DNA of 64,000 nt from Haliotis cracherodii (taxonomy: Eukaryota): positions 4,030,001 through 4,094,000 of the forward strand of contig NW_027266283.1 in assembly GCF_022045235.1 (NCBI RefSeq). Reading direction: 5' to 3'. The notes beneath the pieces are model-generated. The model searched no databases and was not told where the DNA came from. It was given only the letters and a program-made list of their open reading frames with translations. Position 1 is the first letter of the stretch; the number at the start of each line of letters is the position of its first letter. Of the stretch, positions 200-54,200 are shown in pieces. Made by a program: the position numbers and the translations under genes.

Positions 200-298
200 A
201 TTGTGGAGGACGCATCTGTCAGTGGAGAGGACGTCTTCAGCCTAGCACCTGTAGTTGTAGCTGCCCGAAACTTACTTCTGGAAAAAGTTGCGGAAAAC
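200..298 (+). CDS. Exon: single EGF-like module
   Basis: tttcag|A..C|gtaag, 99 bp; DCGGRICQWRGRLQPSTCSCSCPKLTSGKSCGK. Confidence 0.85.
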
Positions 299-3200: not shown

Positions 3201-6200
3201 AGATTGCAACCTCAAGTGTGCAAACGGAGGCATCCTGGACAAGCTAAGGTGTGAGTGTAAATGTGTTGAGGGCTACCGGGGATCGGACTGCAGCAAACCT
3301 CCGTGTAACCCCAAGGACTGCGTCAATGGGAGCCTGGACAAGACAACGTGCGCCTGCAAGTGCCTACCAAACTGGCATGGCCCTAAGTGCGGTATGTGGT
3401 ATAACTTTAATCCAACCTTAACCAAACAGTCTGGTATGTTTCGACGGTCGTAGATGGTATTTGGAAGACAATGAACAGGGGGAAGAGGGCGAGGTTCAAG
3501 TGGGTCGTGAGGTCGGGAGACTGGTTTGGGAGACTGGATTTGTGAGACTGGAGTGTGGATACGCCGTCAACAATTAACCCTGTGCATACTTAATTTCAGA
3601 CTGTGATCTTGCTTGTAAGAATGGAGGTACCTTGGACGGGGCAAGATGTCAGTGTATGTGCAGCGGTGGCCACAGAGGTCAGGATTGCAGCAAGCCTCCA
3701 TGCAAGACCTCCTGCATCAGTGGGAAGGTCAACCAGGAGACCTGTGCTTGCGAGTGTGAAAAAGGCTGGAGTGGCCCTTCCTGTGGTAAGATATAGGCAA
3801 ATAGATGGGGTGGCCTTGTACTGAATCTGTTGGCCCGTCACTTCGAAGACCCGTTTTGCTTTCACCCACATTTCCCACGATATGTGGAGCCCATTTGTGA
3901 CACCTGGTTTTAACTGTTGTCAATTACAGAATACGATTCGATGACCTAGATTCCTTGAACCCATTTGGCTAAAACTGACATATTTTTTAACAACCACATA
4001 CTTTCATCGAAAATGAATGCCTAATCCAAATCGAGAGACCATTCGCCCCATCCATGGGCACGGAGAAACATCTGATGGGTTCGAATCCCTGTGCGCCCTG
4101 ATTGTTTTATATGCATTATATCCGTGAACGGCTTTCCCTAAGAGCTACTACATTTGGGACTTTCCTCTCATCGAACTGGGGGCGATCGGGTAGCCTAGTG
4201 ATTAAAGCGTTCGCTCGTCATGCCGAAGACCTGGGTTCGATTCCCTACAAGGGTACAATGTGTGAAGCCCATTTGTGGTGTCCCCCCGCCATGATATTGC
4301 TGGAATATTGCTGGAATATTGCTAAAAGCTGCGTGAGGCCATAATCACTCACTCACATAAGTTAACACGCGATAACTGCTGTTCCAGACTGCAGCCTAAA
4401 ATGCGCCAACGGTGGCACGGTGGACGGGGCGCAGTGTGACTGCACCTGTGTCGGGGGCTTCAGGGGGCTGGATTGCAGTAAGCCACCTTGCCAGACCAAG
4501 TGTATCAATGGCAAGGTCAACCAGGACAACTGTGCTTGCGTGTGCACAGAAGGCTGGAGTGGTTCTTCTTGCGGTGAGTTTGCCAGTTGTATTGCCAGTT
4601 GTATTGCCAGTTGTATTGCCAGTTGTGTTCATTGGGAACTGGCATCACGCTAGGCACAAATATTTTGAATGCTATAGTATTGGCTGTAGAACGAAACGAT
4701 TTAGTCATTTTAGTAAACTTTAGAATGTTTGAATGTACAAAATCCTTTTGCCAGGTTAATATGTCTATGTGAATGCATTCGACACCTAAGAGATGTTACA
4801 ATACTGCAAACGAATCTTGGCTTTTCATGTTTGCTTCCCAATGCTGAAGTCATCCCAATTACTGTAGCGTTACCGCAGGAGAGAAAATGAACATCTCTCC
4901 CGTGAAGATCGGTTAGAATTGATCTTCAGTAACCCATTCTTGTCCCAAGAGGCACTGACAGGAAATATGCGGTCGGGTAGCCTTGTGGTGAAAGTGTTCG
5001 CTCGTCACACCGCAGATCCGGGTTCGACTCCCCTCAAGGGTACAATGTCTGAAGCTTATTTCTGGTGTCCCCCGCCGTGATATTGCTGTAATATTGCTAA
5101 AAGCGGCGTAAAACCACACTCACTCATGGTATCCAACTTGCGCCAGTCGATACTTGTGATGTAAACCATTGAATTGTCTTGTTCCGCATTCCGCCATCAT
5201 ATAGCAGGAAGGCAGTGTTAAACATCCGTGCGGCTTCTGGGTCAGAATAGTTTCTCGAATAGGCACGGTAGTAAGGCAGCATTCTGCTGATTGTGTCACT
5301 GCATCCATCATCACAATGACGTGTTCAAGCACTGATAGAATGGAGGGTAAGATTTCTTTGAGCAGATTACTAATGTTGATGGACCCGACTTTTCAGAATG
5401 CAGTCTCCAATGCAAGAATGGAGGCAAACTGGATGGAGATGCATGTCAATGCTCATGCGTGGACGGTTACAAAGGTTCCGATTGCAGCAAGCCTCCGTGC
5501 AAGACGGCATGTGTCAACGGGAAGGTCAACCAGGAGACCTGTGCCTGCGAGTGTACTGCTGGGTGGAGTGGTCCCAAGTGTGGTACGTACCAATAGCTAG
5601 AGCGGTTATGTGACAGATCTTTCGAAACGTATACTAGAAACCCCATTCTCGGGTTATTGAAGATAAAACAATCATTTACAGTAGACTGCGGTTATAACGA
5701 ACTCAAAGGGACCACTATTTTTAGTTCGTAATAACCTTAGTTCGTTATAAGCATATATACAGCATGTATACAACAAATGGCCGGGACTTTAACATAAGTA
5801 CGTAATATCGGTCAGTACCTTATAAGCGTGTTCGTTATAAACGTAGTTTACTGTATACATGTGACATATAATGAACGTGTGGATGTAATACAACGTGAGT
5901 TGTTGCGATAGCATTAATCCTGTTTAACGCCGCACACAGCAATATTCCAGCTTGATAGCGGTGGTCTGAAAATAATAGTCTGGACGAGACAATGTAGTGA
6001 TTGACATGAGCATCGATCCACGCAATTGGGATACGATGATATTCATCAACCAAGTCAGCGACCCTGACCATCCGATCCCGTTAGTCTCCTCTTACAATCA
6101 TTGTTTGCTTAAGACATATTCTACCCGGAATCTTCACGGGTGGGAGAGTCTAAAGCGCATTAGGTAATCCTCTACTTGACTCTTGAACACTTTTGGCAGA

Positions 6201-9200
6201 TTGCAGCCTGAAGTGTGCCAATGGAGGAAGTTTGCAGAAAGACACGTGTCGGTGTACATGCATTGGGGGCTATCGTGGTACAGACTGCAAGACGTCACCG
6301 TGTACCACTGTATGTGTTAATGGCAAGGTGAACCAGACGAACTGCTCCTGTGAATGTACCGAGGGCTGGACTGGTCCCAAGTGCGGTGAGTACAGAATCT
6401 GTCACTATCAGGGGCCCTCATTTTATGTATGTGAGCATGCGCATGGTTCCATGAGGGCTGACGTAGATAGTGATATGATTGTGTAAGTTAGATGGTTGCG
6501 GATGCATGTTTTAAGGTGTGATTATAGATACACGGGAGGACTTGGGGTTGGGGGACCGGGTGTGCCAATACTGATGTCATATTTTTAAAACTCAGTGTTT
6601 CCTTTTAATTTAATATTTTACGCATTTTAATTTAGTGTCATAGATCATACTGGACGGACTTAGCACACGAACTACGTAGCAATTTGTATGCTGTACAATG
6701 CGTGACACTAATAGAAAATTCTTCAATTGAGATTCGTTAACATGAAACAATTAATGTGACTATGCGTGCCTTCTGTAAATGATATCACATTTAGAAGTGA
6801 TACATAAAACAAATTGTTAGCTTAAGTCACCTGAAGGAACTCCGAAAAGGTATGTTCCTCGCAATAAAGAAGTTGACATCGATACCCGATGATAGTGGTA
6901 GGGCGTCCACCCGGAGAGCGAAAGGTCCGGGGTTCGATCCCCGTCATACCAAAAGACGTTTAAACATGGTACTCGTTTTTACCCTGTTTGGCGCTCGGCA
7001 TTTATGGGCTAAAACAAAGACTCGTCGGCATGGAGTCAATATACTGTGTCTAAGTGGGTATTCATGTTAAACTGCGGCATGGTATCTCAGTGGGCTTGCA
7101 CTATAAATCGGCATCAGTCGGGACTAGTACAAGCTGCTACACACACGTGTGCATGCTACAGAAGTGCAATAATCTTTGAACGCGACGTTAACCCCTATTT
7201 CACCTCACTTCGCCTGATACTGCGAGAATATGGCTCCAACTCACTCGCTCTGCTGTATTTTAGATTGTAATCTGGAATGTCAGAATGGCGGCACGTTGGA
7301 TCAAGCCAAGTGTCGGTGCGCGTGTGCCGGTGGGTACCGCGGCGCTGTCTGTAGCCTGCCGCCTTGTACGACCCCGTGTATCAACGGCAAGGTGAACCAG
7401 GAGAACTGTGCTTGTGAATGCAGCGAGGGATGGAGTGGACCCAAGTGTGGTACGTACATTGTAATTCGATTTTGTCCTTGAAGGTTTATCTACCTTTGTT
7501 TGTTAATAACAAATGTTTCAAAAATCAACTCTGAACATCTTCAAATTTTACAGGACTCTTTAAATTTTAACTCACTCATCATTCAACATTAAAGTTGCAT
7601 CGGCATTATTTCATCCATATAGCGACGTTGAATTGTGATAAACTAGTCAGTTGTGCCGACTCAAGTCTCTTCTTTAGTTTAGACAGAAATATCTGTAATT
7701 TCGTTACTTGATTCGATTTTTGAAAATCATCTCTATAATACAATATAACAAGAGTATTAAATACTGCTCGATTTAAGTCGATGTAAGCTTATAATGTATT
7801 ATCCTTCAACCCTCACCCGTTATTCTCAATAATACAAAGACAAATATATAATTTCATACCCTTATCAACGTATAGGTTTGAACAGGTCTGGATGAGTATT
7901 TATGCAGTATAAAATTCCAAATATCGATACTGGCTCGCTTGAATTGATATTCCACAAGGAGATTCAGATTTAAAGGGGCCTTCTTTACCACTCGTCATTG
8001 ACACCGTCTCGTTTTCATTTTAAAAATTGCTAAATGCTCTACAACATTTAATGTTATCTGTAGGTCATTTGAGAAAAGTGAAGGATTTTTTTGTACACGT
8101 TTTCAGATTGTAAGCTAAAGTGCTTGAACGGAGGATCGTTGCAGACGTTAACCTGTGAATGCAAATGTGTTGGTGGCTATAGGGGAGCCGACTGTGGTTT
8201 ACCACCATGCAAGCCAGGCTGTGTCAATGGCAAGGTCAACCAGACGGATTGTGCTTGCAAGTGTTCGGAGGGCTGGACAGGGTCCAAATGCGGTGAGTCA
8301 TTTTTCCAACATGGACATAACACATCAACGCCAGTCTCGATTATCTGGCGAAAGAGGACCGGCTCCTTGGTCTTTGGTAGAGCGTCCGCCCGGAGAGCGG
8401 AAGGTCCGAGGTCTCATCCCCGACCGCGTGATAACAAAAGACGTTAAAAGATGGTACTTGTTGTTACCCTGTCTGGCGCTCGGCATTAAGGGGCTAAAAC
8501 AAGGACTGGTCGGCTCGGAGTCGGTATACTGTGTCTGAGTGGGGTATTCATGTTAAACTGCGTCATGGTATCTCAGTGAGCTAGCACTATAAATCGGCAT
8601 CAGTCCGGTCTAACACAAGCAGCCACACACACACACACGTACATGCACGTCGCTATATAAGTGCAATAATCTTTGACGTGACGTTAAACCCCATTTCACC
8701 TCACCTCACCTCACATCACGAAAGAGATTCCATTGTCTGTGATGATTATGTGAATGGATCAATGGAATGGATGTGAATGGAACGGATGTGAAGGGAACAC
8801 CGAGTGTTCGTGAAATGTATAAACATGACCTGCTCCACATGGTTTGTTATTTAATGCCGCACTCCGCAATGTTCCAGCTATATGACGGCGGTCTGTAAAT
8901 AATCGAGTCTGGACCAGACAATCCTGTGATTGATATCATGAGCATCGATCTATGCAACTGAATTTTGTGATTACAAAGTGTTATTCTTGAGTGATCGGTA
9001 AATGTTCACTTTTTGGATGGTAATGTATGTTGTGCTACTTACTTCAACTGGACCATTTAGTGAACAAAAACAGTTTTGGGGATGTTCTGTAGTGGATACT
9101 GAGCAGACAATTTCGCAAAATAAATCCTTAAATAATCCCGAACCTTTTTTAGATCAGTATATTTCATCAGTTTTACAATATCCCTTAACGCTGCACGTAA

Positions 9201-12200
9201 TTATCAAACTTTAAATAGGATTGGGCGTCACAAGTACTGAACACGTGATCGTTGGTTCGAATCCTAGAGTCACCAGATAATGTTTCCTGGTTTGGACACA
9301 TCGTGATGTAGCCGAAACAAAAAAGTATTTAAATCTGCGTTAAAACAAATAAGGTGTTGGTTATTGTTTGCTTACGCCTTCATATCAGTCGGATATGTGT
9401 AACTTGTGTACCACCAGGAGAACCTGACATTTCGGTAGAATATAGGTCTTCAGCAACCCATGCTTGTCCTAACAAGCGACTATGCTTCTCGGAAGAGGCG
9501 ACTTACGGGATCAGGTGGTAAGACTCGCTGACTTGGTTGAAGCATGTCATCGATCCCAATTGCGTGGATTGATGCTCATGATGTCAATCACTGGGTTGTC
9601 TGGCCCAGACTCGATTATTTACAGACCACCGTCAACTAGGTGGAATATTGATGAGAACGGCGAAATACAACCAACCAACCAATCAATCCTTTGTTTCAGA
9701 CTGCAGTCTTAAATGCGCCAATGGAGGAGCCTTGGACAAGGAGAAGTGTGAATGTGCCTGTGCTGGTGGTTACCGAGGTGCCGACTGTACACTTCCCCCG
9801 TGTAAGACGGTCTGTGTTAACGGGACAGTCAACCAGAAGAACTGTGCCTGCGAGTGTACTGAAGGATGGACTGGTGCCAAGTGTGGCAAGTCTTTCTTAT
9901 TCCATTAAAATTACTTTTCAAAGTACGCATAGAAAACACATGATCTGCGTTTGCTCGAACTGAATATGTATGACTATGGTGGACTCCGTTTTGGCATTCG
10001 TAACATGTCAGTATTAGCTAACAGCTACATTTTGTCTAAGCCTATATTCCACAAAATTGCCAAGTGGTCACGTGTCACACTTTTTGCAGAGTTGTCTACC
10101 CTTTCAGCCTGATTGTGAATCTTTACTTTTCAACTCTGGATATTCCCAGTCTTTCGTTCCACCTTTAGCCAAAAACACCTTGTCATATAACTGAAATACT
10201 GTTAAGCACAACTAACACCCAACCCACGTGCATTTTATAAACAAGAATCGGCGATGGTTGTCCTTGGTTTACAATGGTGGAATTCAGTGGATAATACTTG
10301 GCTCATAGGCAACATCTGTTTTACCTGGTTGAATGTTGCCTTCTAAAGTCTTATGTTGGAATGGCGTGATTTTTTTGTGATACTTGCCAAACATATTCAG
10401 ATTCAATACGCTAATGGAGGTACCTTAGACCAGGAGAAATCAGCGTTGCATGTAATGCTCAGTGAAATCTGTTTCGGCAGATAATAATCATTTTCTTGCG
10501 TTAACATTGTGTATTTAATTGATATTACAGACTGTCAACTAACATGCAAAAATAACGGGACGCTGGACAGCGACAAGTGCGAATGCACGTGTACTGGTGG
10601 CTACCGAGGAGCCGACTGTAGTCTCCCCCCATGTAAGACAGTCTGTGTCAATGGAAAGGTCAACCAGAAGAATTGTGCCTGCGAGTGTACCGAAGGCTGG
10701 AGTGGTGCCAAGTGTGGTGAGTTATAACATAACAGATCCTTCATCCTGTATCAGTGGCAGTGGGGTAGCCTAGTAGTTAAAGTGTTTGCTCGTGATCATG
10801 ACGAGGATCCGGGTTCGATTCCCCACATGGGTACAATGTGTGAAGCCCATTTCTGGTGTCCCCCCGCCGTGATATTGCTGGAATATTGCTAAAAGCGGCG
10901 TAAAACCATACTCACTCATCCTGTTTCCAGACAATCTATTGTACTTGTCGGCATGTCATTGGTGTCTCCCGTAGTCTTATGTGAACATGCGTTTTTCAAA
11001 CGGAACATCTTTAAATCTCAAGTAATAAGCAAGAGCAAATAATTATATTGTGCATATGTGTCATTACGATGTTTTTTAGATTGCGGTCGCAAGTGCGGCA
11101 ATAATGGCACCTTGAATGCGGACAAATGTGAATGTACGTGTGTTGGTGGTCACCGCGGTGTCAACTGTACCAAGCCTCCATGTACGACGGCATGTGTCAA
11201 TGGCAAGGTCAACCAGAAGAACTGTGACTGCGAGTGTACAGCCGGGTGGAGTGGTCCCAAGTGCGGTAGGTTTCTTGTGGTTTCAACAGAACCACAAATA
11301 TATACTTGCATATCGTTCGTTAATGTATGTTACGTGCAGGTAATAACTTACATTCTGATAAACAACGCATTTTGACAGTTTTGTTATTTGAGCATATTTT
11401 AATGGTATGTCTGCACCACGCTTGTGATTGTTTCACGAAAATTGTAAAGTAGTACTCCCTCAGTATTTAGTACTTGGCCTTGGTCTGTCGTATGGGGGCT
11501 GTGGGGTAGTGTAGTGATTATAACGCTCCCTCGTCAGGCCGAAGCCCATTTCCTCAATACCACCCACTTCCATCCCTACAATGATATTGCTTGAATATTG
11601 CTAAAAGAGGCGTAAAACTGTACTCCCTTACTCTTGATATCAGGGCGGTCGGATGGCCTAATGGTTAAAGCGTTCGCTCGTCACGCCGACCCGGGTTCGA
11701 TTCCAGACATGGGTACAATGTCTGAAGCTCATTTGTGGTGTCCTCCGCCGTGATATTGCTGGAATATTTCTTAAAAATCGGCGTAATACTATACTCCCTC
11801 ACTATTGTCCTCGCTATAAACAGACACTAGTTCCTGTTTCCGAATCAGATTGCAGCCTTACCTGTGCCAATGGAGGAACCTTGGATAAAATCAACTGTCG
11901 GTGCGCTTGTGCCGGTGGCTACCGTGGTTCCGATTGTTCCAAGCCTCCGTGCAAAACCGAGTGTGTCAATGGGAAAATCAATCAGGAGAATTGTGCCTGC
12001 GAGTGTACCAAAGGATGGAATGGCCCCAAGTGCGGTGAGTTGAATCAGTTTATGAGAGACCCGTGAAGGTGTTCTTGATCAGCAACCCATGCTTGTGGCA
12101 AGAAGCGACTAACGGGATTGGGTGGTCAGACTCGCTGACTTGGTTGATGCATGTCGTCGCATCCCATTTGCGTGGATCGATGCTCATTATGTCAATCACT

Positions 12201-45200: not shown

Positions 45201-48200
45201 CAACCAACAACCAACCGTGAAGCTACACATACTAGTATCGATGGTAATGGTACTAAGGCTGGCACCACGGTTCCTTTTGGTGGTCCTTGGAATTCCAAGT
45301 TCTGAGGAAAATGAGGGGCACGGGTGGCCCTGTCGTCGAGGGCGCCGCGATTCGCTGGACAGAATTGCGTCCCTTGGGCATGCCAGAAACCTATGATTGT
45401 GGGTTCGAATCCCGGTTCGCCCCGATTACGTTTCTAGGTTTGTCAGCACCATACCCGCGCTCGTTGGTTTCACCGAAGTGTTAAACGTCCGAGACATGCA
45501 TCACTTCGGGCTTTCCTCCTTCATTAAGCTGACACGCCGTGATATAACTGGAATACTGTTAGAAGCGGCGTTAAACCCAACTCACTCATTCTAAGGAAAA
45601 TGTATAGACCCTGATTTAAAGGAAACGCTCCTTGATTAAACGATATGGAGCTGTACTGAACTAAAGTTCAGGATCGTGGATATTTTTTAGATTTCTTTAT
45701 CAAATGTCGTGCATCATGTAATCTGCATCTTTGAGCCATTTTAGTGTATGTTCTTTGGGATAGCATTAATTCCAGACTAATCTTGATTTCCCGACATTGT
45801 TCTTTTTGTTACCAAAATTGCATCACTGCCAAAAGCTTTGAAGAATGTTACAATTTGTATCATTGACTGTTTATATAGACTGCCAACTGAAGTGTTCTAA
45901 CGGAGGAACACTGGACAAGGCAAAGTGTCAGTGCGCATGTGCAGGAGGCTATAGAGGAGCGGATTGCACCAAGCCTCCGTGCAAGACGGAATGTGTCAAG
46001 GGAAAGGTCAACCAGGAGAACTGTGCCTGCGAGTGTGCGGAAGGATATGTTGGTTCCAAGTGCGGTGAGTTTGTTCTCTTCTCATCGGAATTCGGAAGGT
46101 ACCCTCTGTCTTTGTTAGTGCTCGACAAACGCTAAACGAAGATACTTTCCCTGATAGTCTAATAGAGACGCTAACTGAGACGTCTTAGTTTAGCTTGATA
46201 GGTTCGATTAAATGAACACACTGTCACTCTTGAAGTGAACATCCAGCGAAAACAGCTTGATTTACAAAGTCCTAACATGTTACAGACTGTAATCTCAAGT
46301 GTACAAATGGAGGTAAACTGGATCCGAGCACCTGCAAGTGCGCATGTACTGGTGGCTACCGTGGTGCCGACTGCAGTCTTCCTCCATGCAAGACGGAGTG
46401 TATCAATGGCAAGGTCAACCAGAAAGACTGTGCCTGTGAATGTAACTTCGGTTGGAAGGGACCAAAATGCGGTACGTGACCCGTTAATCGATTACCTTTT
46501 TAATTGAAATGCTCAATACGTGACTGCAGTGATTGCATAATTTGCAAATTGATATACTACTCAAAACAAGTTAAGGAACACCCATTTCGAAGGCTGTGTG
46601 TTGCAAGACCAACCGGCAATGGCAGATTAACTTTAGTCATATAAAAAAAATCGGGTGTTCTTTAACTTCTTTTGAGTAGTATATGTAGGAAGGTGATTGA
46701 GATATCTTGTTCACAACATCCGGAACTACCTGTCAAGATCCGGGTTAGAATTCATCTTCAGCAATCTATGCTTGCCGTATCAGGCGACTACCGGGAGCGG
46801 GTGGTCAGGCTCGCTGACTTGGTTGATGTTTCATCGTATCTGTACTGCGTAGACTGATGCTCATGATATCAGTCACTTGATTGTCTGGTGCAGACTCGAT
46901 TATTTACAAACCGCCGTCATATAGCTCGAATATTGCTGATTGAGGCGTTAAACAACAAACAAACATCCGAAGCAATGACATGGTTGAAGTATTTGACTGA
47001 TCACGAGGAAAGCTACAATGACAAATTGTATGGATGCAAATATAAGACAATACAATTGTATTTATGTTGCAAAATTGCTTGTAAACTATCGCAATCCTAT
47101 ACACGATGGATGTCCCTAACAACGGTCGCCAAACCCAAGTAATGGGGTCATTGCAGGCATTGACCAATCGCATGTATGTACCACATTTTACCGTAAATCA
47201 GATGTTCCCAAAACCTGTCATTCTGGCCTGTAGATTGCAAGCGGCAGTGCAGAAACGGAGGTGTGCTGAATCCGGAAACTTGTGAGTGCGCATGCGTGAA
47301 AGGCTACCGCGGCGCCCTGTGTGGCCTTGACCCCTGCACCACCAAGTGCATCAATGGCAAGGTCAATCAGCCGAACTGCAAGTGTGAGTGTCTGGAAGGA
47401 TGGAGCGGTCCGTCTTGTGGTGAGTGGTTAGATGAGGTTAACTTGTAAAACTGACATTATTAGACAGGGATTAGAAACGGTACCCAGCAAACTTATGTTA
47501 AGATTCATGTTGATACTAAATTTATAGTGTGGTCAGACAGTGCCTTGGTTGCGTCACGGCACCGATATGATGTATGTTCCTGTCATATCGTCATGACTGG
47601 ACTGGACCCGTGAAGATCCGGAGTAGAATAGATCTTCAGCATCCAATGCATGCTGTAAATGGTGACTGTGCTTGTCGTAAGAGGCGACAAACGGGATCGG
47701 GTGGTCAGGCTCACTGACTTGGTTGATGCATGTCATCGTACCCCAATTGCGTGGATCGACGTTCATGATGTCAATCACTGGATTATCTGGTCCAGACTCG
47801 ATTATTTACTGACCGTAGTCATATAGCTGGAATATTGCTGAGTGCAAAATCTGAAACATAACTGGACTATTGACTTTTGCTTTAAACACTTAAAACAGTG
47901 ATCCTGCAAACATTCTGCAAAATGAAACTTTCATCACATTTGTCACAATTACCCACGTGTGAGAGGAAGGGGTGCAGTCAAGTGGTTAAAACATTCGGTT
48001 ATCACACCGAAGGCTTCAATTCCCCGCATTGGTATGATGCGTGAAGGCTATTGCAGATGTCCCCCTGTTTTATATTGATGGAATATATTTCTAAAAGCGG
48101 AGACAAACCTTACTCGCTCATGTTTGGGATTACGTGTTATTGGAAATTGAAATACTGTTGTCAGATTTGTTTATGGCGGGGATCGGTGGAGGGGCGGGGA

Positions 48201-51200
48201 TCGGTGGAGGGGCGGGGATCGGTGGAGGGGCGGGGATCGGTGGAGGGTCGGTGATCGGTGGAGTGACATAGTGGCTTAACCATTTCATTAGCTCTGTGAA
48301 TTCCTTGTTTTATCTCCATATTAATAGATTATGTGTAAACATTGGTGTCGGACATCGCGATACTGCAGTCAAGGCAGGAGCGGGCATTCACACTCGTCGC
48401 CACAAATTTATATTTACAAACACATCCATCGATACTCCAGGGTCGTATGTCTATTCTATTATGATGGATACCTCACGGCAGCTTGAATAAACTGTCACGC
48501 TGCAAATAACCGAATACAGAATACATCCAGACGAGGGACTTTCGGAAAGATGTTACTCATTGGAGATGAAGTTTCCACCGAAGTGAAACTGACAGCGAAA
48601 GGGTATAGGGTACTTGTCGTAATATAAAGGAGAATATAATACACTGGGTTATCGAGCATGAACGATACCAGACGGCCGTTCAAGAGGAAGAAGATGGCAT
48701 CCTCCCGTCATGAGGCAGCGGCCCGTGGAGCACCAATAGTTCTCATAAACAATAATGCCGACCGCCTCCGTGGTCTAGTGGTAGAGCGTCCGCCCGGAGA
48801 GTGGAAGGTCCGGGGTTCGATCCCCGACCGCGTCATACCAAAAGACGTTAAAAGATGGTACTTGTTGTTACCCTGTCTGGCGCTCGGCATTAAGGGGCTA
48901 AAACAAGGACTGGTCGGCTCGGAGTCAGTATGCTGTGTCTGAGTGGGGTATTCATGTGGCATTGTATCTCAGTGAGCTAGCACTATACATCGGCATCAGT
49001 CCGGACTAGTGCACGCACGCACGCACGCATGCAGTCGCTATATATGTGCAATAATCTTGGACGCAACGTTAAAACCCCATTTCACTGCACTTATATTAGT
49101 ACAGCTCCTGCTTTAGTGGCACTGCTCCTGCTGTAGTAGTAGTTCTGCTCCTGCTATAGTCTTACTTTGGGAAGGCTTCACAAATGCTCTAGACTTTCTA
49201 GAATCTTGACATGCATCTTAAGGTACGTTCTCAGAAAATATTGTATTTGAATACAGAATGCGGGCTGAAGTGTAACAATGGCGGCACCCTGTTAACGCGA
49301 TACTGCCGATGCATGTGCGCCAACGGCTACCGTGGCGACTCCTGCAGCGACCCCCCGTGTACGACGGAGTGTGTGCGCGGCCGGGTCAACAAGCGCACCT
49401 GTGAATGTGTCTGCAGAAAATATTGGTCCGGACCCAAATGTGGTAGGTATATCGTGACGGTATTGTATTTATTTTGAAACTTTAAGACTAAACTGTCGGA
49501 TGCACGTCGTACGTCAGAAGGCGTGATTGTTGCTCTTGCTATCGACCACTAGCTCTTGTCTTACAGGACCACACTCGTTCACAGAAAGTTAGAATATCGT
49601 TCATTGCGACTTAAAAATCCACTCACGATGTTTTTAGTCAATCAAAATGTTTAAGATATTCTTTCAGGGCATCGCCGCGAATAGCTGCAAGATTGCTGGT
49701 GCGATTGAGCAATAATTATTTGCAATCTCCCCAGGCAAGTGGGTAGCTAATGTTTGATATGCCATATACATGAAATAGTTACTTAAATATTAATAAGTTG
49801 TATGAATAACATGGTAAACAAAACGGACTATTAGCCATATGTTTGAATAAAACGAGGGAAAATGATGTAACTATTCAATTCGGCAGATCGGAGTTAGAAT
49901 AGGTCTTCAGCAACCCATGCTTGTCGTAAGAGGCGACAAACGGGATGGGGTGGTCAGGCTCGCTGACTTGGTTGATGCATGTCATCGATCCCAATTGCGT
50001 GGATCGATGCTCATTATATCAATCACTGGATTGTCTGGTCCAGACTCGATTATTTACTGACCGTAGTCATATAGCTGGAATATTGCTGAGTGCGGCATCA
50101 ACAAACAAACAAACGTATGTATAATAAAGCTATTAATACTCGTCCTGATGACTTACTGTTTTGCTTCTTAAAGACAGGATAATAATAACTTTCTGCAGGT
50201 TGCAGCACTACTGTATATCGGCATATAAAAATGACGTTTGACTTTAGGTAGCGTTCCATGATACAAACTGTTTCCCGTGCAGAGTTTCTTCCCTTGGGAG
50301 TGCCAGGATCCTTTGATAGTGGGGTCGCATCCTAAATTATCACTGATTAGTATCCATGGTTTCTCGGCACCAAACCCAAGGGCGACGTTTTTACCAAAGT
50401 GGTAAACGTCTAAGACCTGCATCACTCCGAGATTTCCTCCACATCAAGCTGACACTCCGGATATAGCCGACACGACGTTGAAAGCCAGGCTCAGCGTGAA
50501 TCCCTGTTGGTTGAAATCCTATCAAACGCTGGTTAGAATATATATTTATTTATTTTTGGTCTCGCCGTTTATTTTCAGACTGTAACCTTAACTGCCGGAA
50601 TGGTGGCGTCCTTGACCCCAACAAGTGTTCCTGTACGTGTGTCAATGGCTTCCGAGGAGCCGCATGTGGCCTGCCTCCGTGTAAGAGCCCCTGCATCAAC
50701 GGAAAACACAACCCCAAGAGCTGTGCCTGCGAATGCTCAGAAGGATGGAGTGGCTCGAAATGCGGTGAGAACAACTTTGTGGAACTGTAGCCTGGCCACA
50801 CAGTTCAGATCATCTGATGTACTTCCTAACAGATTTTAACTGCTACTAAATTAGTAGCAGCCTTGTTACACGGGAATAACTGTTTAGGTTTAAGTCCAAT
50901 GATATTTAGAACAGGGTGTTCAGGGTGGAAACAATACTTTGATGGAAAGTCCAGTGGACACGCTTGCCTCAGGAAGATGAGTTTTGCCCGACTTTCACCA
51001 GGTTCACATACCTTCAAGGTTATTTACAATAAGATATGACGTTAAATAAGGTTTGGGTTACACTTTCGCAAAGTACTGATGCCTTTATCACTAACTTAGT
51101 ACTCAGTTTCTCAAAGATGAGGCCTTGCTGTGGAACGGATTTGTTCAAAATAGCTGGAAGGTCAAGGTCGACGTTCAGAATTTGCATTACATGTTTTCTA

Positions 51201-54200
51201 CATTCTCTTTTGAGGCAAAGCAATTAGCATGAAATATAATATTTGCATCTATCTACAAATATCCCAAGTCATATGTCGGTGCTATGTCTATCAAAGGTCA
51301 TATTTGCGGTTTTCTTGAAAAGTGTGGGAAGAAATGTGTAATTTTTGTTGCAACTTCAAAAGTTATTTTAATTACAACCAAGGTCGCTGTCAGTATCACA
51401 GTATTGGAGTCATGGCATGTGGATCCCTCATATGAACGCTACAATGTTTGTCTGAAAGCTACATGTCTGTATATTGATAAGGCCGACAAGTTTCATTTGA
51501 GTCATGTATTTATACATTCTTAAACAGGGAGTGGCGTAAGATTGACATTTCATATTCCTTAAAGCTAGGTATGTGTATGCAAACGTTGGGCCTTTTCGTT
51601 GTGTATTAATATTACCTTGCCTCCATATCAAAATGATGATCCGATTGGTTCACGTGATCTTGATAAAATGTTACGTATCCCTCCGGGGAAGGAAATACGA
51701 CCCTTAAAGCCCCGCACCTATAAATTCCTTGACATTAACGCATTCAGACAGCAGAGATATAAATGCTGTGATAAAAAAAAAAACATTCAAAAAAGGAAAT
51801 AAACTTCTTCTTTTTTAATTTGTGTGAAAGGGCCAGTGTCTGTATTTTGGCCCTTTTTTACCCTCAGGCATTTGCATGAGATTTACCATGTGAGATTGAT
51901 AAACTACTACTAAAAGTACAAACACATGCTATTGAAGTACTTTTAAATGATTTAGACTAATGACAACTTTGATGAAATAGTTGAAATATGATAAGGTTCC
52001 AAACTTTCAAAATCTCTCTCAGACAACCAGTCTCAGGCCCACATGGAAATGAGAGCTAAAAGGGCCAAAATCTAACGAAGTGACTTTGGCCCTTTTATAG
52101 AATTTTAAGTAGCAATATTTCAATAACGCATCAATAAAATTCATACAATTTTTCTTCTACAGGTAGACAAGAACTGATAGATGTTATTTATGCAATAATA
52201 TGCAAAAAAGGCCAAAGTGCATTTTTGGCCCCTTGTAGCTCTAAGCTCTTCATATATTCCACGTGATACTCTTACATGACCATGTTCTCCTTCAGACTGT
52301 AACCTCACGTGTGACAATGGCGGGATCCTGGACGGGAACCGGTGTGAGTGTTCTTGTATCAATAAGTACCGTGGGAAGACATGCAGCAAACCCCCATGCA
52401 CTACCCCATGTGTTGAAGGTCGCGTCAACCAAGACAACTGTGCCTGTGAATGTTTCCTGGGGTGGAGCGGCGCCAAGTGTGGTAAGTTAGAACAGCATTG
52501 TTCAAATCAGATTATTCGCAAACCCATTTATCTGGTCTGCCGGCACCGTGGAAGAATAGGTCTTCAGCAACCCATGCTTGCCATAAAAGGTGACTATGCT
52601 TATCGTAAGAGGCGACTAACGGGATCGGGTGGTCAGGCTCGCTGACTTGGTTGATGCATGTAATCATATCCCAATTGCGTGGATCGATGCTCAAGGTCTT
52701 CAATCACTGGATCGTCTGTTCCAGACGCGATTATATTAGCTGGAGTATTGCTAAGTGCGGCGTTAAACAACAGTCGGCACCGTTCATTTGTAGGCTATCT
52801 GGCTCTCAGGTTAGATAAACCCGTGAAGATCCGGGGTAGAATAGGTCTTCAGCAACCCATGCTTGCCGTATAAGGTGACTATGCTTCTCGTAAGAGGCGA
52901 CTAACGGGATCGGGTGGTCAGGCTCGCTGACTTGGTTGATGCATGTCATCATATCCCAATTGCGTGGATCGATGCTCATATTAATCACCGGATTTTCTGG
53001 TCCAGACTCGATTATTTACAGACCGCCGTCATATAGCTGGAATATTGCTGAGTGCGGCGTTAAACAACAAACCAGCCAACCAACTCAGATTAGATGGAAG
53101 CGTACCATCCCTACAATAGTGATGCAATGGGGAGATTGTTCTGCGCAAGTGGACACAGCAAACCATCTACAATTACTGTAAATCCTTAGGATCGCGATGT
53201 TTTCACACAGGTCCGCCTTTCGTTCGTTCGTCATGATTGACGACAATGGGGCGAATAACACATCGTTATTAGCTTAACCTCGTCTGTCAGCACTGAGTTC
53301 TTGCTCAGAGAAATTGCTTATTTTCTGGAGACATGACTGACAGATTAACAGTCAACCGCACGCAGCAATGAATCGTCTTCCTGGTGCTGCAAGGAAGGAA
53401 GGTCACTCCACACCGTAACCAATGACGCGTGACTAAGTGTTTTTTTTAACCTCCATCGTTGAAGAGTTTGTTCTAAGCTAAGATCGCGATCTTAAATCTA
53501 AGCCGTTTTACAATCGCGCTAAGATCTGTTTGTGCAAATGGAATTGGACAATTGTATGTTTGATTGTAGCTGATTTGCAGGCGCCTAAGATCGATTGTAA
53601 ATGAGATTGTTCTGTGCAAATGGGCCTTGGTCTGTAAGGATCTGAGACTCGTGTCTCCTTTGGATTCCATCCCCGTGAGGATTCGTACGAGGCGACTTGG
53701 TCGATTTGCGTATCGTCGTCACCCAACTGCGTGAATCGTTGATCATAATGGAAATCACTGGGTCGTTCAGTCAAAACTCGATGATATACAAGCTAAACTT
53801 GTTTAACGCCGCACTCGGCAATATTCCAGCTTCATGGAAATAATGCAGTCTGGACCAGACATCCAATCTCATTGCTGTGGGTGGGTAACCTGATGTTTTA
53901 AGCGTTTGCTCAACACGCCGAATACCCGGTTTCGATTCCCGACATGGGTACAATGTGTGAAGCCCATTTCTGGTGTCCTCTGCCGTGATATTGCTGGAAT
54001 ATTGCTAAAAGCGGCGTAAACACTCGCTCACTCCATATGGCTGTAGTACCGCGTTAAAGGAACCAAACTTGTCCAAGGGCACAACCGGACAGTGTGGGGC
54101 GTGTTTGCAGTAAATAGGTTTTCTGAAATGTCTGGCTTTGCGTGCCATTTCTCGTAGACTGAAAAGGTTTCTAATATTAAAGTATTTCAATGACAACTGA

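What the first reader, a model, noticed from the sequence alone, without database searches (positions are those of the whole stretch)
3203..52481. 53 symmetric 186-bp cassette exons: a possible length- and sequence-variable isoform generator
Seen: each exon is a multiple of 3, phase 1-1, with intact splice sites and no stop, so any subset splices in frame. Variation clusters at surface positions between invariant Cys/Gly. Known: Dscam exon clusters and oyster bindin F-lectin repeats diversify by splicing and recombination. Inference: exon skipping or allelic copy-number change could tune rod length or binding surface. Caveat: I saw no docking/selector-type intronic motif, and the shortest introns (107 and 114 bp) do not force mutual exclusion, so constitutive inclusion is equally plausible.
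Basis: partly seen in the sequence, partly recalled or inferred. Interest (0 to 1): 0.8.

Follow-up and report, generated by a model that had tools for sequence, protein, structure and literature searches.

The report
Giant abalone EGF-repeat gene
The 53 equal-sized exons are real and belong to one huge, strongly expressed black-abalone gene that RefSeq splits into small models; it encodes a rod of about 110 EGF-like domains, and the RNA data available show each exon spliced to its neighbour, so it looks like an ordinary constitutive repeat protein, not a splicing-based diversity generator.

Summary
There are 53 plus-strand exons at 3203-52481. The first is 189 bp and the other 52 are exactly 186 bp. 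All are phase 1-1 with AG acceptors, 51 have GT donors and 2 have GC donors, and none has a stop. Each encodes two 31-aa non-calcium-binding EGF-like domains. The genome is Haliotis cracherodii, and this array is the only one of its kind in it.

The exons sit inside one mosaic gene of about 81 kb: candidate signal peptide, EGF/ShK-like pairs, Thr-Pro mucin stretch, the array, EGF, ShK-like, two Sushi domains, and an orphan 442-aa C-terminal exon. RefSeq splits the locus into short "WIF-1-like" and "shifted-like" models.

Spliced contigs from three RNA-like runs join 37>38>39 and 40>41>42>43>44>45 exactly at the predicted sites, including one GC donor. A DNA run has none of these joints. No exon-skipping joint was among the best-supported ones.

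Most exons are old duplicates (dS saturated) under purifying selection (pN/pS 0.22). There is a significant 9-exon super-repeat and a recently homogenised 2-exon unit present three times.

I read this as constitutive exons of a giant secreted EGF rod built by tandem exon duplication. The isoform-generator idea is unsupported but not excluded, because contigs miss rare isoforms. Copy-number variation remains plausible.

The parts
200..298 (+). upstream single EGF-like exon (99 nt, phase 1-1)
   Evidence: AG/GTAAGA boundaries; peptide CGGRICQWRGRLQPSTCSCSCPKLTSGKSCGK. Not confirmed by RNA.
1784..1885 (+). ShK-like six-Cys exon (102 nt, phase 1-1)
   Evidence: Pfam ShK is below threshold (E 0.029, 15.3 bits against cut-off 20.9).
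2250..2492 (+). exon encoding a (TTTP)11 mucin-like stretch plus one EGF-like domain (243 nt, phase 1-1)
   Evidence: Its donor G|gtaagt feeds exon 1 of the array.
3203..3391 (+). array exon 1 (189 nt)
3600..3785 (+). array exon 2 (186 nt)
4388..4573 (+). array exon 3
5397..5582 (+). array exon 4
6200..6385 (+). array exon 5
7264..7449 (+). array exon 6 (95.7% identical to exon 15)
8107..8292 (+). array exon 7
9700..9885 (+). array exon 8 (GC donor gcaagt)
10531..10716 (+). array exon 9
11080..11265 (+). array exon 10 (family 10/19/28/37, 94-97% identical)
11849..12034 (+). array exon 11
12330..12515 (+). array exon 12
13379..13564 (+). array exon 13
16274..16459 (+). array exon 14
   Evidence: Spliced 14>15>16 in RefSeq model P0002.
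16567..16752 (+). array exon 15 (follows the 107-bp intron)
17165..17350 (+). array exon 16
17508..17693 (+). array exon 17
18856..19041 (+). array exon 18
19609..19794 (+). array exon 19
20036..20221 (+). array exon 20 (AAG acceptor)
22243..22428 (+). array exon 21 (family 21/30/39, 98-99.5% identical)
22557..22611 (+). decayed exon remnant in intron 21: intact acceptor, in-frame TAA, homology ends after about 55 nt
22901..23086 (+). array exon 22
24599..24784 (+). array exon 23 (best match of unit 2 of the H. rubra fragment, 87% aa)
25374..25559 (+). array exon 24 (joint best match, with exon 9, of H. rubra unit 3, 80% aa)
26536..26721 (+). array exon 25 (best match of H. rubra unit 4, 83% aa)
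28867..29052 (+). array exon 26
29506..29691 (+). array exon 27 (the only exon ending in A)
30073..30258 (+). array exon 28
31459..31644 (+). array exon 29 (AAG acceptor)
32430..32615 (+). array exon 30
   Evidence: Segment 32411-33039 is 94.7% identical to 39941-40572.
32840..33025 (+). array exon 31
33306..33491 (+). array exon 32
34525..34710 (+). array exon 33
35262..35447 (+). array exon 34
36408..36593 (+). array exon 35
36953..37138 (+). array exon 36
   Evidence: Its tail appears as the loose end before 38306.
38307..38492 (+). array exon 37
   Evidence: RNA joint 37>38.
39495..39680 (+). array exon 38
   Evidence: RNA joints 37>38 and 38>39.
39960..40145 (+). array exon 39
   Evidence: RNA joint 38>39; the loose end after 40145 equals the start of exon 40.
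40373..40558 (+). array exon 40
   Evidence: RNA joint 40>41.
40911..41096 (+). array exon 41
   Evidence: RNA joints 40>41 and 41>42.
41211..41396 (+). array exon 42 (GC donor, used in RNA)
   Evidence: Joint 41395>42010, which is GC..AG after the 1-base shift.
42011..42196 (+). array exon 43 (weakest donor, gtaata)
   Evidence: RNA joints 42>43 and 43>44.
42925..43110 (+). array exon 44 (identical to exons 46 and 48)
   Evidence: RNA joint 44>45.
43332..43517 (+). array exon 45
44362..44547 (+). array exon 46
44769..44954 (+). array exon 47
45879..46064 (+). array exon 48
46286..46471 (+). array exon 49 (first 159 nt identical to exons 45 and 47)
47234..47419 (+). array exon 50 (divergent)
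49257..49442 (+). array exon 51 (divergent)
50579..50764 (+). array exon 52 (divergent)
52296..52481 (+). array exon 53 (divergent)
   Evidence: A tail like this exon's last 27 nt is followed by ACT in RNA contigs.
55603..55692 (+). single EGF-like exon (90 nt, phase 1-1), starts ACTGCAAAC
   Evidence: Its start matches the 3 letters that follow the exon-53-like tail in RNA contigs.
56536..56598 (+). candidate half-EGF mini-exon (63 nt, C-x3-C-x10-C-x-C)
   Evidence: AG/GT boundaries, phase 1-1. No RNA evidence.
57187..57264 (+). candidate half-EGF mini-exon (78 nt)
   Evidence: AG/GT boundaries, phase 1-1. No RNA evidence.
58509..58616 (+). ShK-like six-Cys exon (108 nt, phase 1-1)
   Evidence: No Pfam hit; assigned by the Cys pattern only.
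61583..61759 (+). Sushi/CCP exon 1
   Evidence: Pfam Sushi E 8.4e-9, 36.1 bits; boundaries.
62237..62434 (+). Sushi/CCP exon 2
   Evidence: Pfam Sushi E 5.3e-8, 33.6 bits; boundaries.
63004..64000 (+). last coding exon; its reading frame runs on to window coordinate 64331, outside the window. It encodes 442 aa with no known family.
   Evidence: Acceptor ttgcag|CA in phase 1. The ORF ends at 64331. A 97%-identical 435-aa Logan fragment, P0001, is the only relative found.

Best explanation
The 53 exons are constitutive coding exons of one very large Haliotis cracherodii gene of about 81 kb and at least 65 exons, predicting at least about 4,100 aa. It encodes a secreted mosaic protein. Each exon encodes a fixed pair of 31-aa, non-calcium-binding EGF-like domains. 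Both have the pattern C-x3-C-x9/10-C-x-C-x-C-x8-C, in which the third Cys is displaced. The linkers alternate: four residues (S-K-P-P) inside an exon, and one residue (Asp in most exons; Glu, Ala or Asn in a few) across each splice junction. Spliced in order, the exons would give an uninterrupted run of 106 EGF domains, or about 110 with the flanking ones. By analogy with tenascin and WIF-type EGF rods (inference), this would be a thin rod of roughly 0.2-0.3 micrometres. The rod is flanked by ShK-like modules, a Thr-Pro mucin stretch, two Sushi domains and an orphan 442-aa C-terminal domain.

The array grew by unequal crossing-over in introns. This included blocks of 9 exons and, recently, a 2-exon unit now present three times. 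Most copies are old and individually conserved, while a few are kept alike by gene conversion. Phase 1-1 symmetry and the absence of stops are inherited properties of a duplicated EGF module exon under purifying selection. They are not an adaptation for combinatorial splicing.

Shown: exon anatomy, uniqueness in the genome, expression, splicing of neighbours at the predicted sites, selection and periodicity. Inferred: single-transcript continuity over all 53 exons, secretion, rod shape and role as an extracellular scaffold or mucus/adhesive component.
For: - **Anatomy:** 53 intact phase 1-1 exons, and the only such array in the genome.
- **EGF identity:** Pfam EGF_Teneurin reaches its cut-off for 2 of 7 exons tested (28.2 and 24.4 bits against 24.3). 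A profile of the exons hits the WIF-1 EGF domains at E 3.8e-9 and fibrillin-1 EGF2-3 at 4e-6 among solved structures. The AF2 model of one exon unit has pLDDT 90 with two beta-hairpins, and its nearest folds are the same EGF pairs.
- **RNA:** spliced contigs in X1, X3 and X4 join 37>38, 38>39, 40>41, 41>42, 42>43 (GC donor), 43>44 and 44>45 exactly at the predicted boundaries. DNA run X17 has none of these joints and has contigs that run through the introns. One 575-nt contig carries 41-42-43. Long contigs (up to 3189 nt) start at the 44/48 tail and 45/49 head and are long enough to reach the 3' end. RefSeq P0002 has 14>15>16 and P0004 has 39>40.
- **Flanking exons:** all flanking exons are also phase 1-1 multiples of 3, with two Sushi domains and a candidate signal-peptide exon with a phase-1 donor upstream.
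- **Selection:** median dN is 0.21 while dS is saturated in half of the pairs. Pooled pN/pS is 0.22 for the 21 pairs with dS below 0.5.
- **Duplication history:** the period-9 signal has z = 9 and p < 0.0002, and there are segmental copies that include introns.
- **Conservation:** three units of an H. rubra fragment best match exons 23, 24 (tied with exon 9) and 25, in that order.
- **No regulatory motif:** no k-mer is shared by more than 4 of 52 introns near the splice sites.
Against: - No single molecule spans the array. Only 7 of the 52 internal junctions were seen in RNA contigs, plus 3 more in RefSeq models.
- The RNA runs are labelled only 'RNA?'. Their exons differ from the window by 0-4%, so they may come from another population or a sister species.
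- Contigs drop rare variants, so minor skipped isoforms are invisible. 1525 further joints were not listed.
- RefSeq model P0165 joins exon 41 to exon 43.
- RefSeq isoforms of echinoderm proteins with the same EGF subtype differ by whole 31-aa units, so skipping of such exons happens elsewhere.
- The signal peptide, the 5' exons and the function are inferred only.
Confidence: 0.75

Rival explanations
1. Length tuner: the same gene, but a meaningful share of transcripts skip one or more array exons, and/or alleles differ in exon number, so the rod length varies between tissues or individuals.
For: - Every subset of exons is in frame.
- The three near-identical 2-exon units 44-49, and the 30-31 and 39-40 copies, are ideal substrates for unequal crossing-over.
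- RefSeq P0165 joins 41>43.
- Weak sites exist: AAG acceptors at exons 20 and 29, a gtaata donor at exon 43, and two GC donors.
- Echinoderm relatives have RefSeq isoforms that differ by 31-aa steps.
- RNA contigs hold a hybrid last-array exon that is absent from the window. In DNA run X17, k-mer depths for exon-37, -38 and -39-type contigs are 3-6 times those of single-copy intron contigs.
Against: - All seven GT/GC-AG joints among the best-supported ones are between neighbours, and 41>42>43 is assembled in all three RNA runs.
- P0165 is one of several truncated Gnomon models and reads on into intron 43 after exon 43; sister models P0002 and P0003 carry frame-shifted EGF ends.
- Most exons are old, unique and individually conserved.
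- The depth figures are contig sums, and they disagree between X1 and X3.
Confidence: 0.15
2. Recognition repertoire, as in Dscam or bindin: regulated choice among sequence-variable cassette exons gives many binding surfaces.
For: Variation is concentrated at about 18 of the 61 positions between invariant Cys and Gly. The symmetric exons would allow it.
Against: - Neighbouring exons are joined to each other, so there is no mutual exclusion.
- There is no docking- or selector-type shared intron motif.
- dN is below dS even in the variable columns (0.68 against 1.30).
- Recently duplicated exons are being homogenised, not diversified.
Confidence: 0.03
3. Several small tandem genes, as RefSeq has it (WIF-1-like, shifted-like), and not one gene.
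For: RefSeq lists at least three separate short models on this contig: P0002 with 244 aa, P0165 with 163 aa and P0004 with 148 aa.
Against: - No exon in the array has a start context, a stop or a phase break.
- P0002 begins with a frame-shifted reading of an EGF exon, P0003 (the H. rubra fragment) ends in one, and P0165 reads on into intron 43.
- RNA contigs bridge across the model boundaries, for example 40>41 and 43>44>45.
- No WIF domain was seen in any flanking exon.
Confidence: 0.04
4. Assembly artefact: a shorter array inflated by mis-assembly of repeats.
For: Exons 44, 46 and 48 are 100% identical, and the core of the 44-45 and 46-47 units is 592/593 identical.
Against: Mean exon-exon identity is only about 70%, the introns are unique and dS is saturated. 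The long introns of the three young units differ (91.8% or less). At most one or two of the units in 44-49 could be affected.
Confidence: 0.03

Closest known systems
EGF I-V of Wnt inhibitory factor 1 / Drosophila Shifted, and fibrillin-1 EGF2-3
   Same: These are the best sequence and fold matches among solved structures (2ygq E 3.8e-9; 2m74 and 5ms9). They are back-to-back, non-calcium-binding EGF domains of about 31 aa with the motifs C-x3-C-x-N-G-G and C-x-C-x2-G-[FYW]-x-G-x2-C. RefSeq names the fragments after them.
   Different: No WIF domain was seen here. There are 106 domains in the array instead of 5. The third Cys has moved from the GG-x-C position to give C-x-C-x-C (alignment). The overall architecture is entirely different.
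Tenascin and teneurin EGF arrays (Pfam EGF_Teneurin PF23106, EGF_TEN PF25024)
   Same: 31-aa EGF-like repeats packed head to tail into a thin rod. These are the only Pfam models that reach or approach threshold.
   Different: Scores are marginal: 13-28 bits against a cut-off of 24.3, and EGF_TEN 18-25 bits against 65. From my own knowledge, vertebrate tenascin EGF repeats lie in one exon, number about 14 and are followed by FN3 and fibrinogen domains, none of which is present here.
Sea-urchin fibropellins (uEGF genes) and other arrays with one EGF domain per exon
   Same: Long runs of EGF modules encoded by symmetric phase-1 exons in a secreted extracellular-matrix protein.
   Different: Here there are two EGF domains per exon, 53 exons of invariant length, and no skipped isoform seen.
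Invertebrate proteins with the same displaced-Cys EGF subtype
   Same: The same C-x3-C-x10-C-x-C-x-C-x8-C unit occurs in tandem in Lingula 'MEGF10' P0005, Patella 'Notch' P0007, Gigantopelta 'draper-like' P0008, Branchiostoma 'MEGF6' P0009, Acanthaster 'mucin-4-like' P0010 and Patiria 'notch-like' P0018. P0009 also combines it with ShK-like modules and Thr-rich mucin stretches. The Patiria and Acanthaster isoforms differ by steps of about 31 aa.
   Different: These are 8-27 matched stretches in other architectures (CAP, VWA, Ig plus transmembrane, NIDO-AMOP-VWD). None has the 442-aa C-terminal domain or an array approaching 106 domains. Orthology is not implied.
Dscam exon 4/6/9 clusters
   Same: Tandem arrays of duplicated, sequence-variable exons.
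   Different: Dscam exons are mutually exclusive, are governed by docking and selector RNA pairing, and encode half Ig domains. Here neighbours are co-included and no shared intron motif exists.
Titin and nebulin super-repeats; the LPA kringle IV-2 copy-number array
   Same: A higher-order periodicity of module exons (9 exons here), and near-identical multi-exon units that invite unequal crossing-over.
   Different: The module type and biology are different. Copy-number polymorphism is not shown here.

Membership tests
EGF-like domain superfamily | Six Cys in about 30-40 aa with the C-x-C-x2-G-aromatic-x-G-x2-C core and a two-hairpin fold | tested here: met
   There are 12 invariant Cys per exon. 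Pfam EGF_Teneurin scores 28.2 and 24.4 bits against 24.3 for 2 of 7 exons, with weaker EGF_2, EGF_TEN and EGF_PEAR1L hits. The WIF-1 EGF domains score E 3.8e-9. The AF2 model has pLDDT 90 with strands 10-12/17-19 and 41-43/50-52, and its top fold hits are EGF pairs (Foldseek E is only 6e-3 for this 61-aa query).
EGF-like domain superfamily | Canonical spacing of the third Cys (G-x-C before the hairpin turn) | tested here: not met
   Position 11 is Leu in at least 90% of units, and a new invariant Cys sits at position 16, giving C-x-C-x-C. This is a variant spacing that many invertebrate proteins share. Disulfide connectivity was not determined.
Calcium-binding EGF (cbEGF) | D/N-x-D/N-E/Q-C1 ... 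D/N ... Y/F consensus | tested here: not met
   The consensus is absent from the unit consensus sequence, and no EGF_CA hit appeared.
WIF-1 / Shifted family (the RefSeq names) | N-terminal WIF domain followed by five EGF domains | tested here: not met
   No WIF hit in any flanking ORF or exon scanned. There are 106 EGF domains in the array, not five. The upstream 20 kb was only inspected by Cys pattern.
Tenascin / teneurin | EGF array followed by FN3 plus a fibrinogen globe (tenascin), or a type II transmembrane protein with a YD-repeat shell (teneurin) | tested here: not met
   The downstream exons are EGF, ShK-like, two Sushi domains and an orphan domain. No FN3, fibrinogen or YD hits appeared.
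Mutually exclusive exon cluster (Dscam type) | Only one exon of the cluster is present in each mRNA | tested here: not met
   Contigs carry 38-39, 41-42-43 and 44-45 together. P0002 carries 14-15-16.
Mutually exclusive exon cluster (Dscam type) | Conserved docking and selector intron elements | tested here: not met
   No 9-12-mer is shared by more than 4 of 52 introns within 150 nt of the splice sites. RNA pairing was not modelled.
Cassette-exon (skipping) array | Non-adjacent exon-exon junctions in RNA | tested here: inconclusive
   None appeared among the 15 best-supported joints on 38250-44249 in three RNA-like runs. But these data are contigs, 1525 joints were not listed, and only 9 of the 53 exons were laid. 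RefSeq P0165 has 41>43.
Copy-number-variable exon array (LPA KIV-2 type) | Different unit numbers between alleles or individuals | not testable with these tools
   Only contig depths and one hybrid exon hint at differences.
Sushi/CCP domain (flanking exons) | Pfam PF00084 above its gathering score | tested here: met
   36.1 and 33.6 bits against 20.7.
ShK/SXC domain (flanking exons) | Pfam PF01549 above its gathering score | tested here: not met
   15.3 bits against 20.9 for 1786-1884, and no hit for 58511-58615. Only the six-Cys spacing ...C-x3-C-x2-C resembles it.

The most novel reading that the evidence does not exclude
The array is a length- and content-variable module. Unequal crossing-over and conversion among the young units (44-49, and the 9-exon blocks) make exon number and exon identity differ between abalone individuals or sister species, and low-level skipping at the weak sites adds isoforms. 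The result would be a rod of heritable, selectable length in a very abundant secreted protein. The hybrid last-array exon and the excess depth of exon-37 to -40-type contigs in the other organism's data would be the first traces of this.
Probability: 0.12. Interest if true: 0.65.

Novelty: new member of a known kind. Interest (0 to 1): 0.35.

Why it matters
**Annotation.** A gene that is abundantly expressed in some samples (contig depth about 2,500 in two runs against 15-70 in a third) is split in RefSeq into spurious 'WIF-1-like' and 'shifted-like' genes in a critically endangered species, and apparently also in H. rubra. A profile search of 1.84 billion representative proteins found no full-length model. 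Expression, selection and orthology analyses on these fragments will mislead.

**Evolution.** This is a clean natural example of how a module-exon array grows. It shows old, individually conserved copies, a 9-exon super-repeat, a dead exon remnant and a young unit still being homogenised, all without a single length change in 52 exons.

**Biology.** A rod of about 110 EGF domains with mucin, ShK-like and Sushi modules and an orphan end domain is a candidate structural or adhesive component of abalone secretions or matrix. It is worth locating in tissue. It does not open a new principle.

Tried and rejected
**C-terminal 442-aa exon**
- Pfam gave nothing: RuvC_III at E 0.03 is noise.
- The ESM Atlas best score was 0.77, with unnamed clusters.
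- The word search found only a 97%-identical Logan fragment.
- AF2 with two sequences gave pLDDT 31, which is unusable, so I made no fold search.

**Collecting transcript fragments to count junctions**
- The word search with RefSeq protein P0002 found only 4 proteins.
- The word search with the exon alignment found none. Length limits apply, so these blanks say little.

**Literature**
- I found nothing on this gene in Haliotis.
- The limpet mucus paper PMC7333891 shows that EGF, ShKT and Sushi proteins occur in pedal mucus but has no homologue of this gene. The mucus role is therefore only a guess.
- The fibropellin search did not return the relevant papers.

**Readings rejected**
- Dscam-type choice, separate small genes and an assembly artefact are rejected; see the rivals.
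- Depth ratios as copy numbers are rejected because X1 and X3 disagree and the depths are sums over contigs.

Exons were searched singly or as an alignment of single-exon peptides; P0002 and the like are public proteins returned by tools.
- Read laying received exactly 6,000 letters.
- The window has no N runs.

Full report
**Observation.** A frame-aware pattern scan finds exactly 53 double-EGF coding units on the + strand between 3203 and 52481.
- Exon 1 is 189 bp. The other 52 are all 186 bp, with no indel in any copy.
- All have AG acceptors (38 CAG, 13 TAG, 2 AAG). There are 51 GT donors and two GC donors of the gcaagt type, at exons 8 and 42.
- Each exon begins with two bases of a codon and ends with one, which is phase 1-1. 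The junction codon is therefore usually Asp, sometimes Glu, Ala or Asn.
- No exon has a stop. Introns range from 107 to 2709 bp, with a median of 616 bp.
- The window contains no N.
- The window is C20:4030001-4094000 of a 1.18-Gb genome. A six-frame search of that genome with one exon peptide gives 53 matches at E <= 0.001, all in this window. The array is complete here and unique in the genome.

**What the exons encode.**
- The consensus is C.LKC.NGGTLD..KC.C.C.GGYRGADC..PPCKT.CVNGKVNQ.NCACECTEGWSGPKC. It has 12 invariant Cys plus N7, G9, G26, P33, G41 and G58.
- This is two EGF-like domains of about 31 aa. They are joined by a four-residue linker inside the exon and by a single residue across each splice junction.
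- Pfam gives marginal EGF_Teneurin hits (28.2 and 24.4 bits against a cut-off of 24.3 for two of seven exons) and sub-threshold EGF_TEN, EGF_2, EGF_PEAR1L and CXCXC hits.
- A profile of the 53 units hits the EGF domains of WIF-1 (2ygq, E 3.8e-9) and fibrillin-1 EGF2-3 among solved structures.
- An AlphaFold2 model of one unit, built from the 53-row alignment, has mean pLDDT 90 and two beta-hairpins. Its nearest folds are those same EGF pairs.
- In the alignment to WIF-1, the usual third Cys (GG-x-C) is Leu here. A new invariant Cys five residues later gives C-x-C-x-C. There is no calcium-binding consensus.

**The gene around them.** All flanking coding pieces on the + strand are also AG/GT-bounded, phase 1-1 multiples of three.
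- Upstream: an EGF exon (200-298), a ShK-like six-Cys exon (1784-1885; Pfam ShK is sub-threshold), and an exon encoding (TTTP)11 plus one EGF (2250-2492).
- Downstream: a single-EGF exon (55603-55692), two candidate half-EGF mini-exons (56536-56598 and 57187-57264), a ShK-like exon (58509-58616), and two Sushi exons (Pfam E 8e-9 and 5e-8).
- Last exon: it starts at 63004 and its frame runs to 64331, beyond the window. Its 442 aa have no Pfam, Atlas or sequence relatives except a 97%-identical Logan fragment. A two-sequence AF2 model failed, with pLDDT 31.
- Further upstream: a second EGF plus ShK-like pair at about -7.4 and -6.7 kb, and at about -16.5 kb an ATG exon reading MTRTMSFAVVLGLLVALLPAVTS... 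that ends in a phase-1 donor. This is a plausible signal-peptide first exon, but it is unconfirmed.
- No transmembrane segment is evident in the last exon.

The picture is a secreted mosaic protein of at least about 4,100 aa, of which the array contributes 3,287.

**Identity and annotation status.**
This fits the published 1.18-Gb HiFi assembly (PMC9709981; listed but not read).
- RefSeq has only short models here: XP_071111778.1 'wnt inhibitory factor 1-like' (P0002, exons 14-16), XP_071111781.1 'protein shifted-like' (P0004, exons 39-40) and P0165 (exons 41 and 43).
- P0002 begins with a frame-shifted reading of an EGF exon, and P0165 reads on into intron 43 after exon 43.
- A profile search of 1.84 billion representative proteins gave only 443 hits at E <= 0.001. 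No protein had more than 34 matched stretches. So no full-length model of this gene exists in that collection.
- An H. rubra fragment (P0003, whose C-terminal end is a frame-shifted EGF exon) has three units whose best matches are exons 23, 24 (tied with exon 9) and 25, in that order. This suggests positional orthology of exons across abalone lineages.
- The same displaced-Cys EGF subtype occurs in tandem in brachiopod, limpet, vent-snail, amphioxus and sea-star proteins with other architectures.

**Expression and splicing.** One run search and one read-laying run were allowed.
- I laid 6,000 letters (38250-44249, exons 37-45) against three runs guessed to be RNA (X1, X3, X4) and one large run that behaves as DNA (X17).
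- The RNA-like runs hold contigs that join 37>38, 38>39, 40>41, 41>42, 42>43, 43>44 and 44>45 at exactly the predicted boundaries. The 42>43 joint uses the GC donor.
- The loose ends at 38306, 39494, 39680 and 40145 are the neighbouring exon ends.
- One 575-nt contig carries exons 41-42-43.
- X17 has none of these joints. It has contigs that run through exon-intron boundaries (for example 40772-41461), so the joints are RNA splicing and not processed DNA copies.
- Contig depth is about 2,400-2,900 in X1 and X4 against 15-70 in X3. Expression is therefore high and sample-dependent.
- No joint between non-neighbouring exons was among the 15 best-supported. The other listed joints lie in intronic repeats.

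The limits of this evidence are as follows.
- These are contigs, which drop rare variants.
- 1,525 further joints were not shown.
- Only 9 of the 53 exons were examined.
- The runs' sequences differ from the window by 0-4% in exons and about 4% in introns, so they may come from another population or a sister taxon.

**A detail I could not resolve.** The long contigs (1.7-3.2 kb) that contain the 44/48 tail and the 45/49 head also contain a hybrid exon.
- Its positions 112-145 equal window exon 43, positions 129-159 equal exon 41, and the last 27 nt equal the tail of exon 53. It is followed by ACT, which is the start of the single-EGF exon.
- The window has no such exon.
- This fits either a converted version of the last array exon in that organism or a different exon content.
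- Contig depths of exon-37, -38 and -39-type sequence in X17 (175, 139, 224) are also several times those of single-copy intron contigs (32-44).
- These are hints, not evidence, of array differences between genomes.

**History of the array.**
- Mean exon-exon nucleotide identity is about 70%. Median dN is 0.21, while dS is saturated for half of all pairs. So most copies are ancient.
- For the 21 pairs with dS below 0.5, pooled pN/pS is 0.22. Even the 18 most variable columns have dN 0.68 against dS 1.30. This is purifying selection, with no sign of diversifying selection.
- Identity peaks at exon offsets 9 and 18 (0.779 and 0.748 against a shuffled mean of 0.716; z = 9.0 and 3.9). The signal is strongest between exons 19-34 and 28-43, which points to an eroded 9-exon (18-EGF) super-repeat.
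- Introns are conserved only for exons 30-31 against 39-40 (94.7%) and for three 1.4-kb two-exon units, exons 44-49.
- In those units the exonA-221-bp intron-exonB core is 592/593 identical between units 1 and 2, while the adjoining long intron is 91.8% identical. The short intron is homogenised too, so this is conversion or unequal exchange, not coding constraint.
- A 55-nt exon remnant with an intact acceptor and an in-frame TAA lies in intron 21. Exons are therefore also lost.

**Interpretation.**
- The simplest account is a constitutive array. A symmetric two-EGF exon was duplicated again and again by unequal crossing-over in introns, and each copy was then kept by selection as part of a long rod. 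Symmetry, intact splice sites and open frames are what such a history leaves behind, and they need no splicing-based function.
- Against a Dscam-like generator: neighbouring exons are co-included, no shared intron motif exists (at most 4 of 52 introns share any 9-12-mer near the splice sites), and dN is below dS.
- A milder version cannot be excluded. This would be occasional skipping at the weaker sites (AAG acceptors at exons 20 and 29, the gtaata donor at exon 43, the GC donors at exons 8 and 42) or allelic change in unit number in the young 44-49 region. Precedents exist in the 31-aa-step RefSeq isoforms of sea-star relatives.
- I give the constitutive reading 0.75 and the length-tuner reading 0.15.
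- The physiological role, a rod-like scaffold or mucus/adhesive component, is inferred from the domain types alone. The limpet mucus proteome paper shows the domain types in pedal mucus but no homologue.

- Exons were never joined into a spliced model for a search. They were searched one by one or as an alignment of single-exon peptides, and that joined step is left out.

**Verdict.** The feature is real and striking, and it is a useful annotation correction. It is a new member of a known kind (a giant EGF-repeat extracellular protein built by tandem exon duplication). The proposed isoform generator is not supported by the data that could be reached.

Noticed in passing
window 22557-22611 (+), intron 21: Decayed array exon. 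It has an intact acceptor tttcag|AC and reads CQLACKNGGT*DKLKC with an in-frame TAA. Homology ends after about 55 nt.
   Followed up: partly
window 56536-56598 and 57187-57264 (+): Two candidate phase 1-1 mini-exons (63 and 78 nt) that encode only the first half of an EGF domain (C-x3-C-x10-C-x-C). They lie between the single-EGF exon and the ShK-like exon. There is no RNA evidence. Other scan notes report half-EGF mini-exon arrays elsewhere in this genome.
   Followed up: partly
L001 about 3496-3575 (about 16.5 kb upstream of window base 1); L002 at window coordinates about -7405 and -6710: Candidate first exon with the signal peptide MTRTMSFAVVLGLLVALLPAVTS and a phase-1 donor, plus a further EGF and ShK-like exon pair. 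If these belong to the gene, it spans about 81 kb.
   Followed up: partly
RNA-like contigs of X1, X3 and X4 laid on window 41039-41069, 42122-42155 and 43331-43490: A hybrid array exon (exon-43-like, then exon-41-like, then the exon-53 tail) that is absent from the window. Contig depths for exon-37, -38 and -39-type sequence in DNA run X17 are also 3-6 times higher than for single-copy intron contigs. The array may differ between genomes.
   Followed up: partly
RefSeq proteins P0002, P0003, P0165 (window exons 13-16 and 41-43): The gene models on this locus, and its H. rubra counterpart, begin or end in frame-shifted translations of EGF exons or read into introns. P0165 skips GC-donor exon 42, which RNA contigs include.
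   Followed up: yes
P0018 cluster (Patiria miniata) and P0010 cluster (Acanthaster planci): RefSeq isoforms of sea-star proteins with the same EGF subtype differ by steps of about 31 aa (2244, 2213, 2182 and 2151 aa; 944 and 913 aa). This means whole EGF units, so cassette use of such exons may occur in these genes.
   Followed up: no
P0024 (Haliotis rufescens LOC124110407): An unrelated abalone protein with about 8 identical VWA units and about 35 identical 41-aa EGF units. Its isoforms differ by 41-42 aa. It is another extreme, very young repeat gene.
   Followed up: no
window 54500-55500 and 59300-59900: Long C/A-rich microsatellite-like tracts that read as His/Pro/Thr repeats in all + frames, with strong negative GC skew. 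They lie in introns between the downstream exons and are low-complexity DNA, not coding sequence.
   Followed up: no
window 4180-4330, 4970-5110 and many other introns: tRNA-like SINE copies (...gggtagcctagtg.ttaaagcgttcgctcgtca.gccgaaga...ggttcgattcc...). 14-mers from two repeat families recur in 9 of the 52 introns.
   Followed up: no
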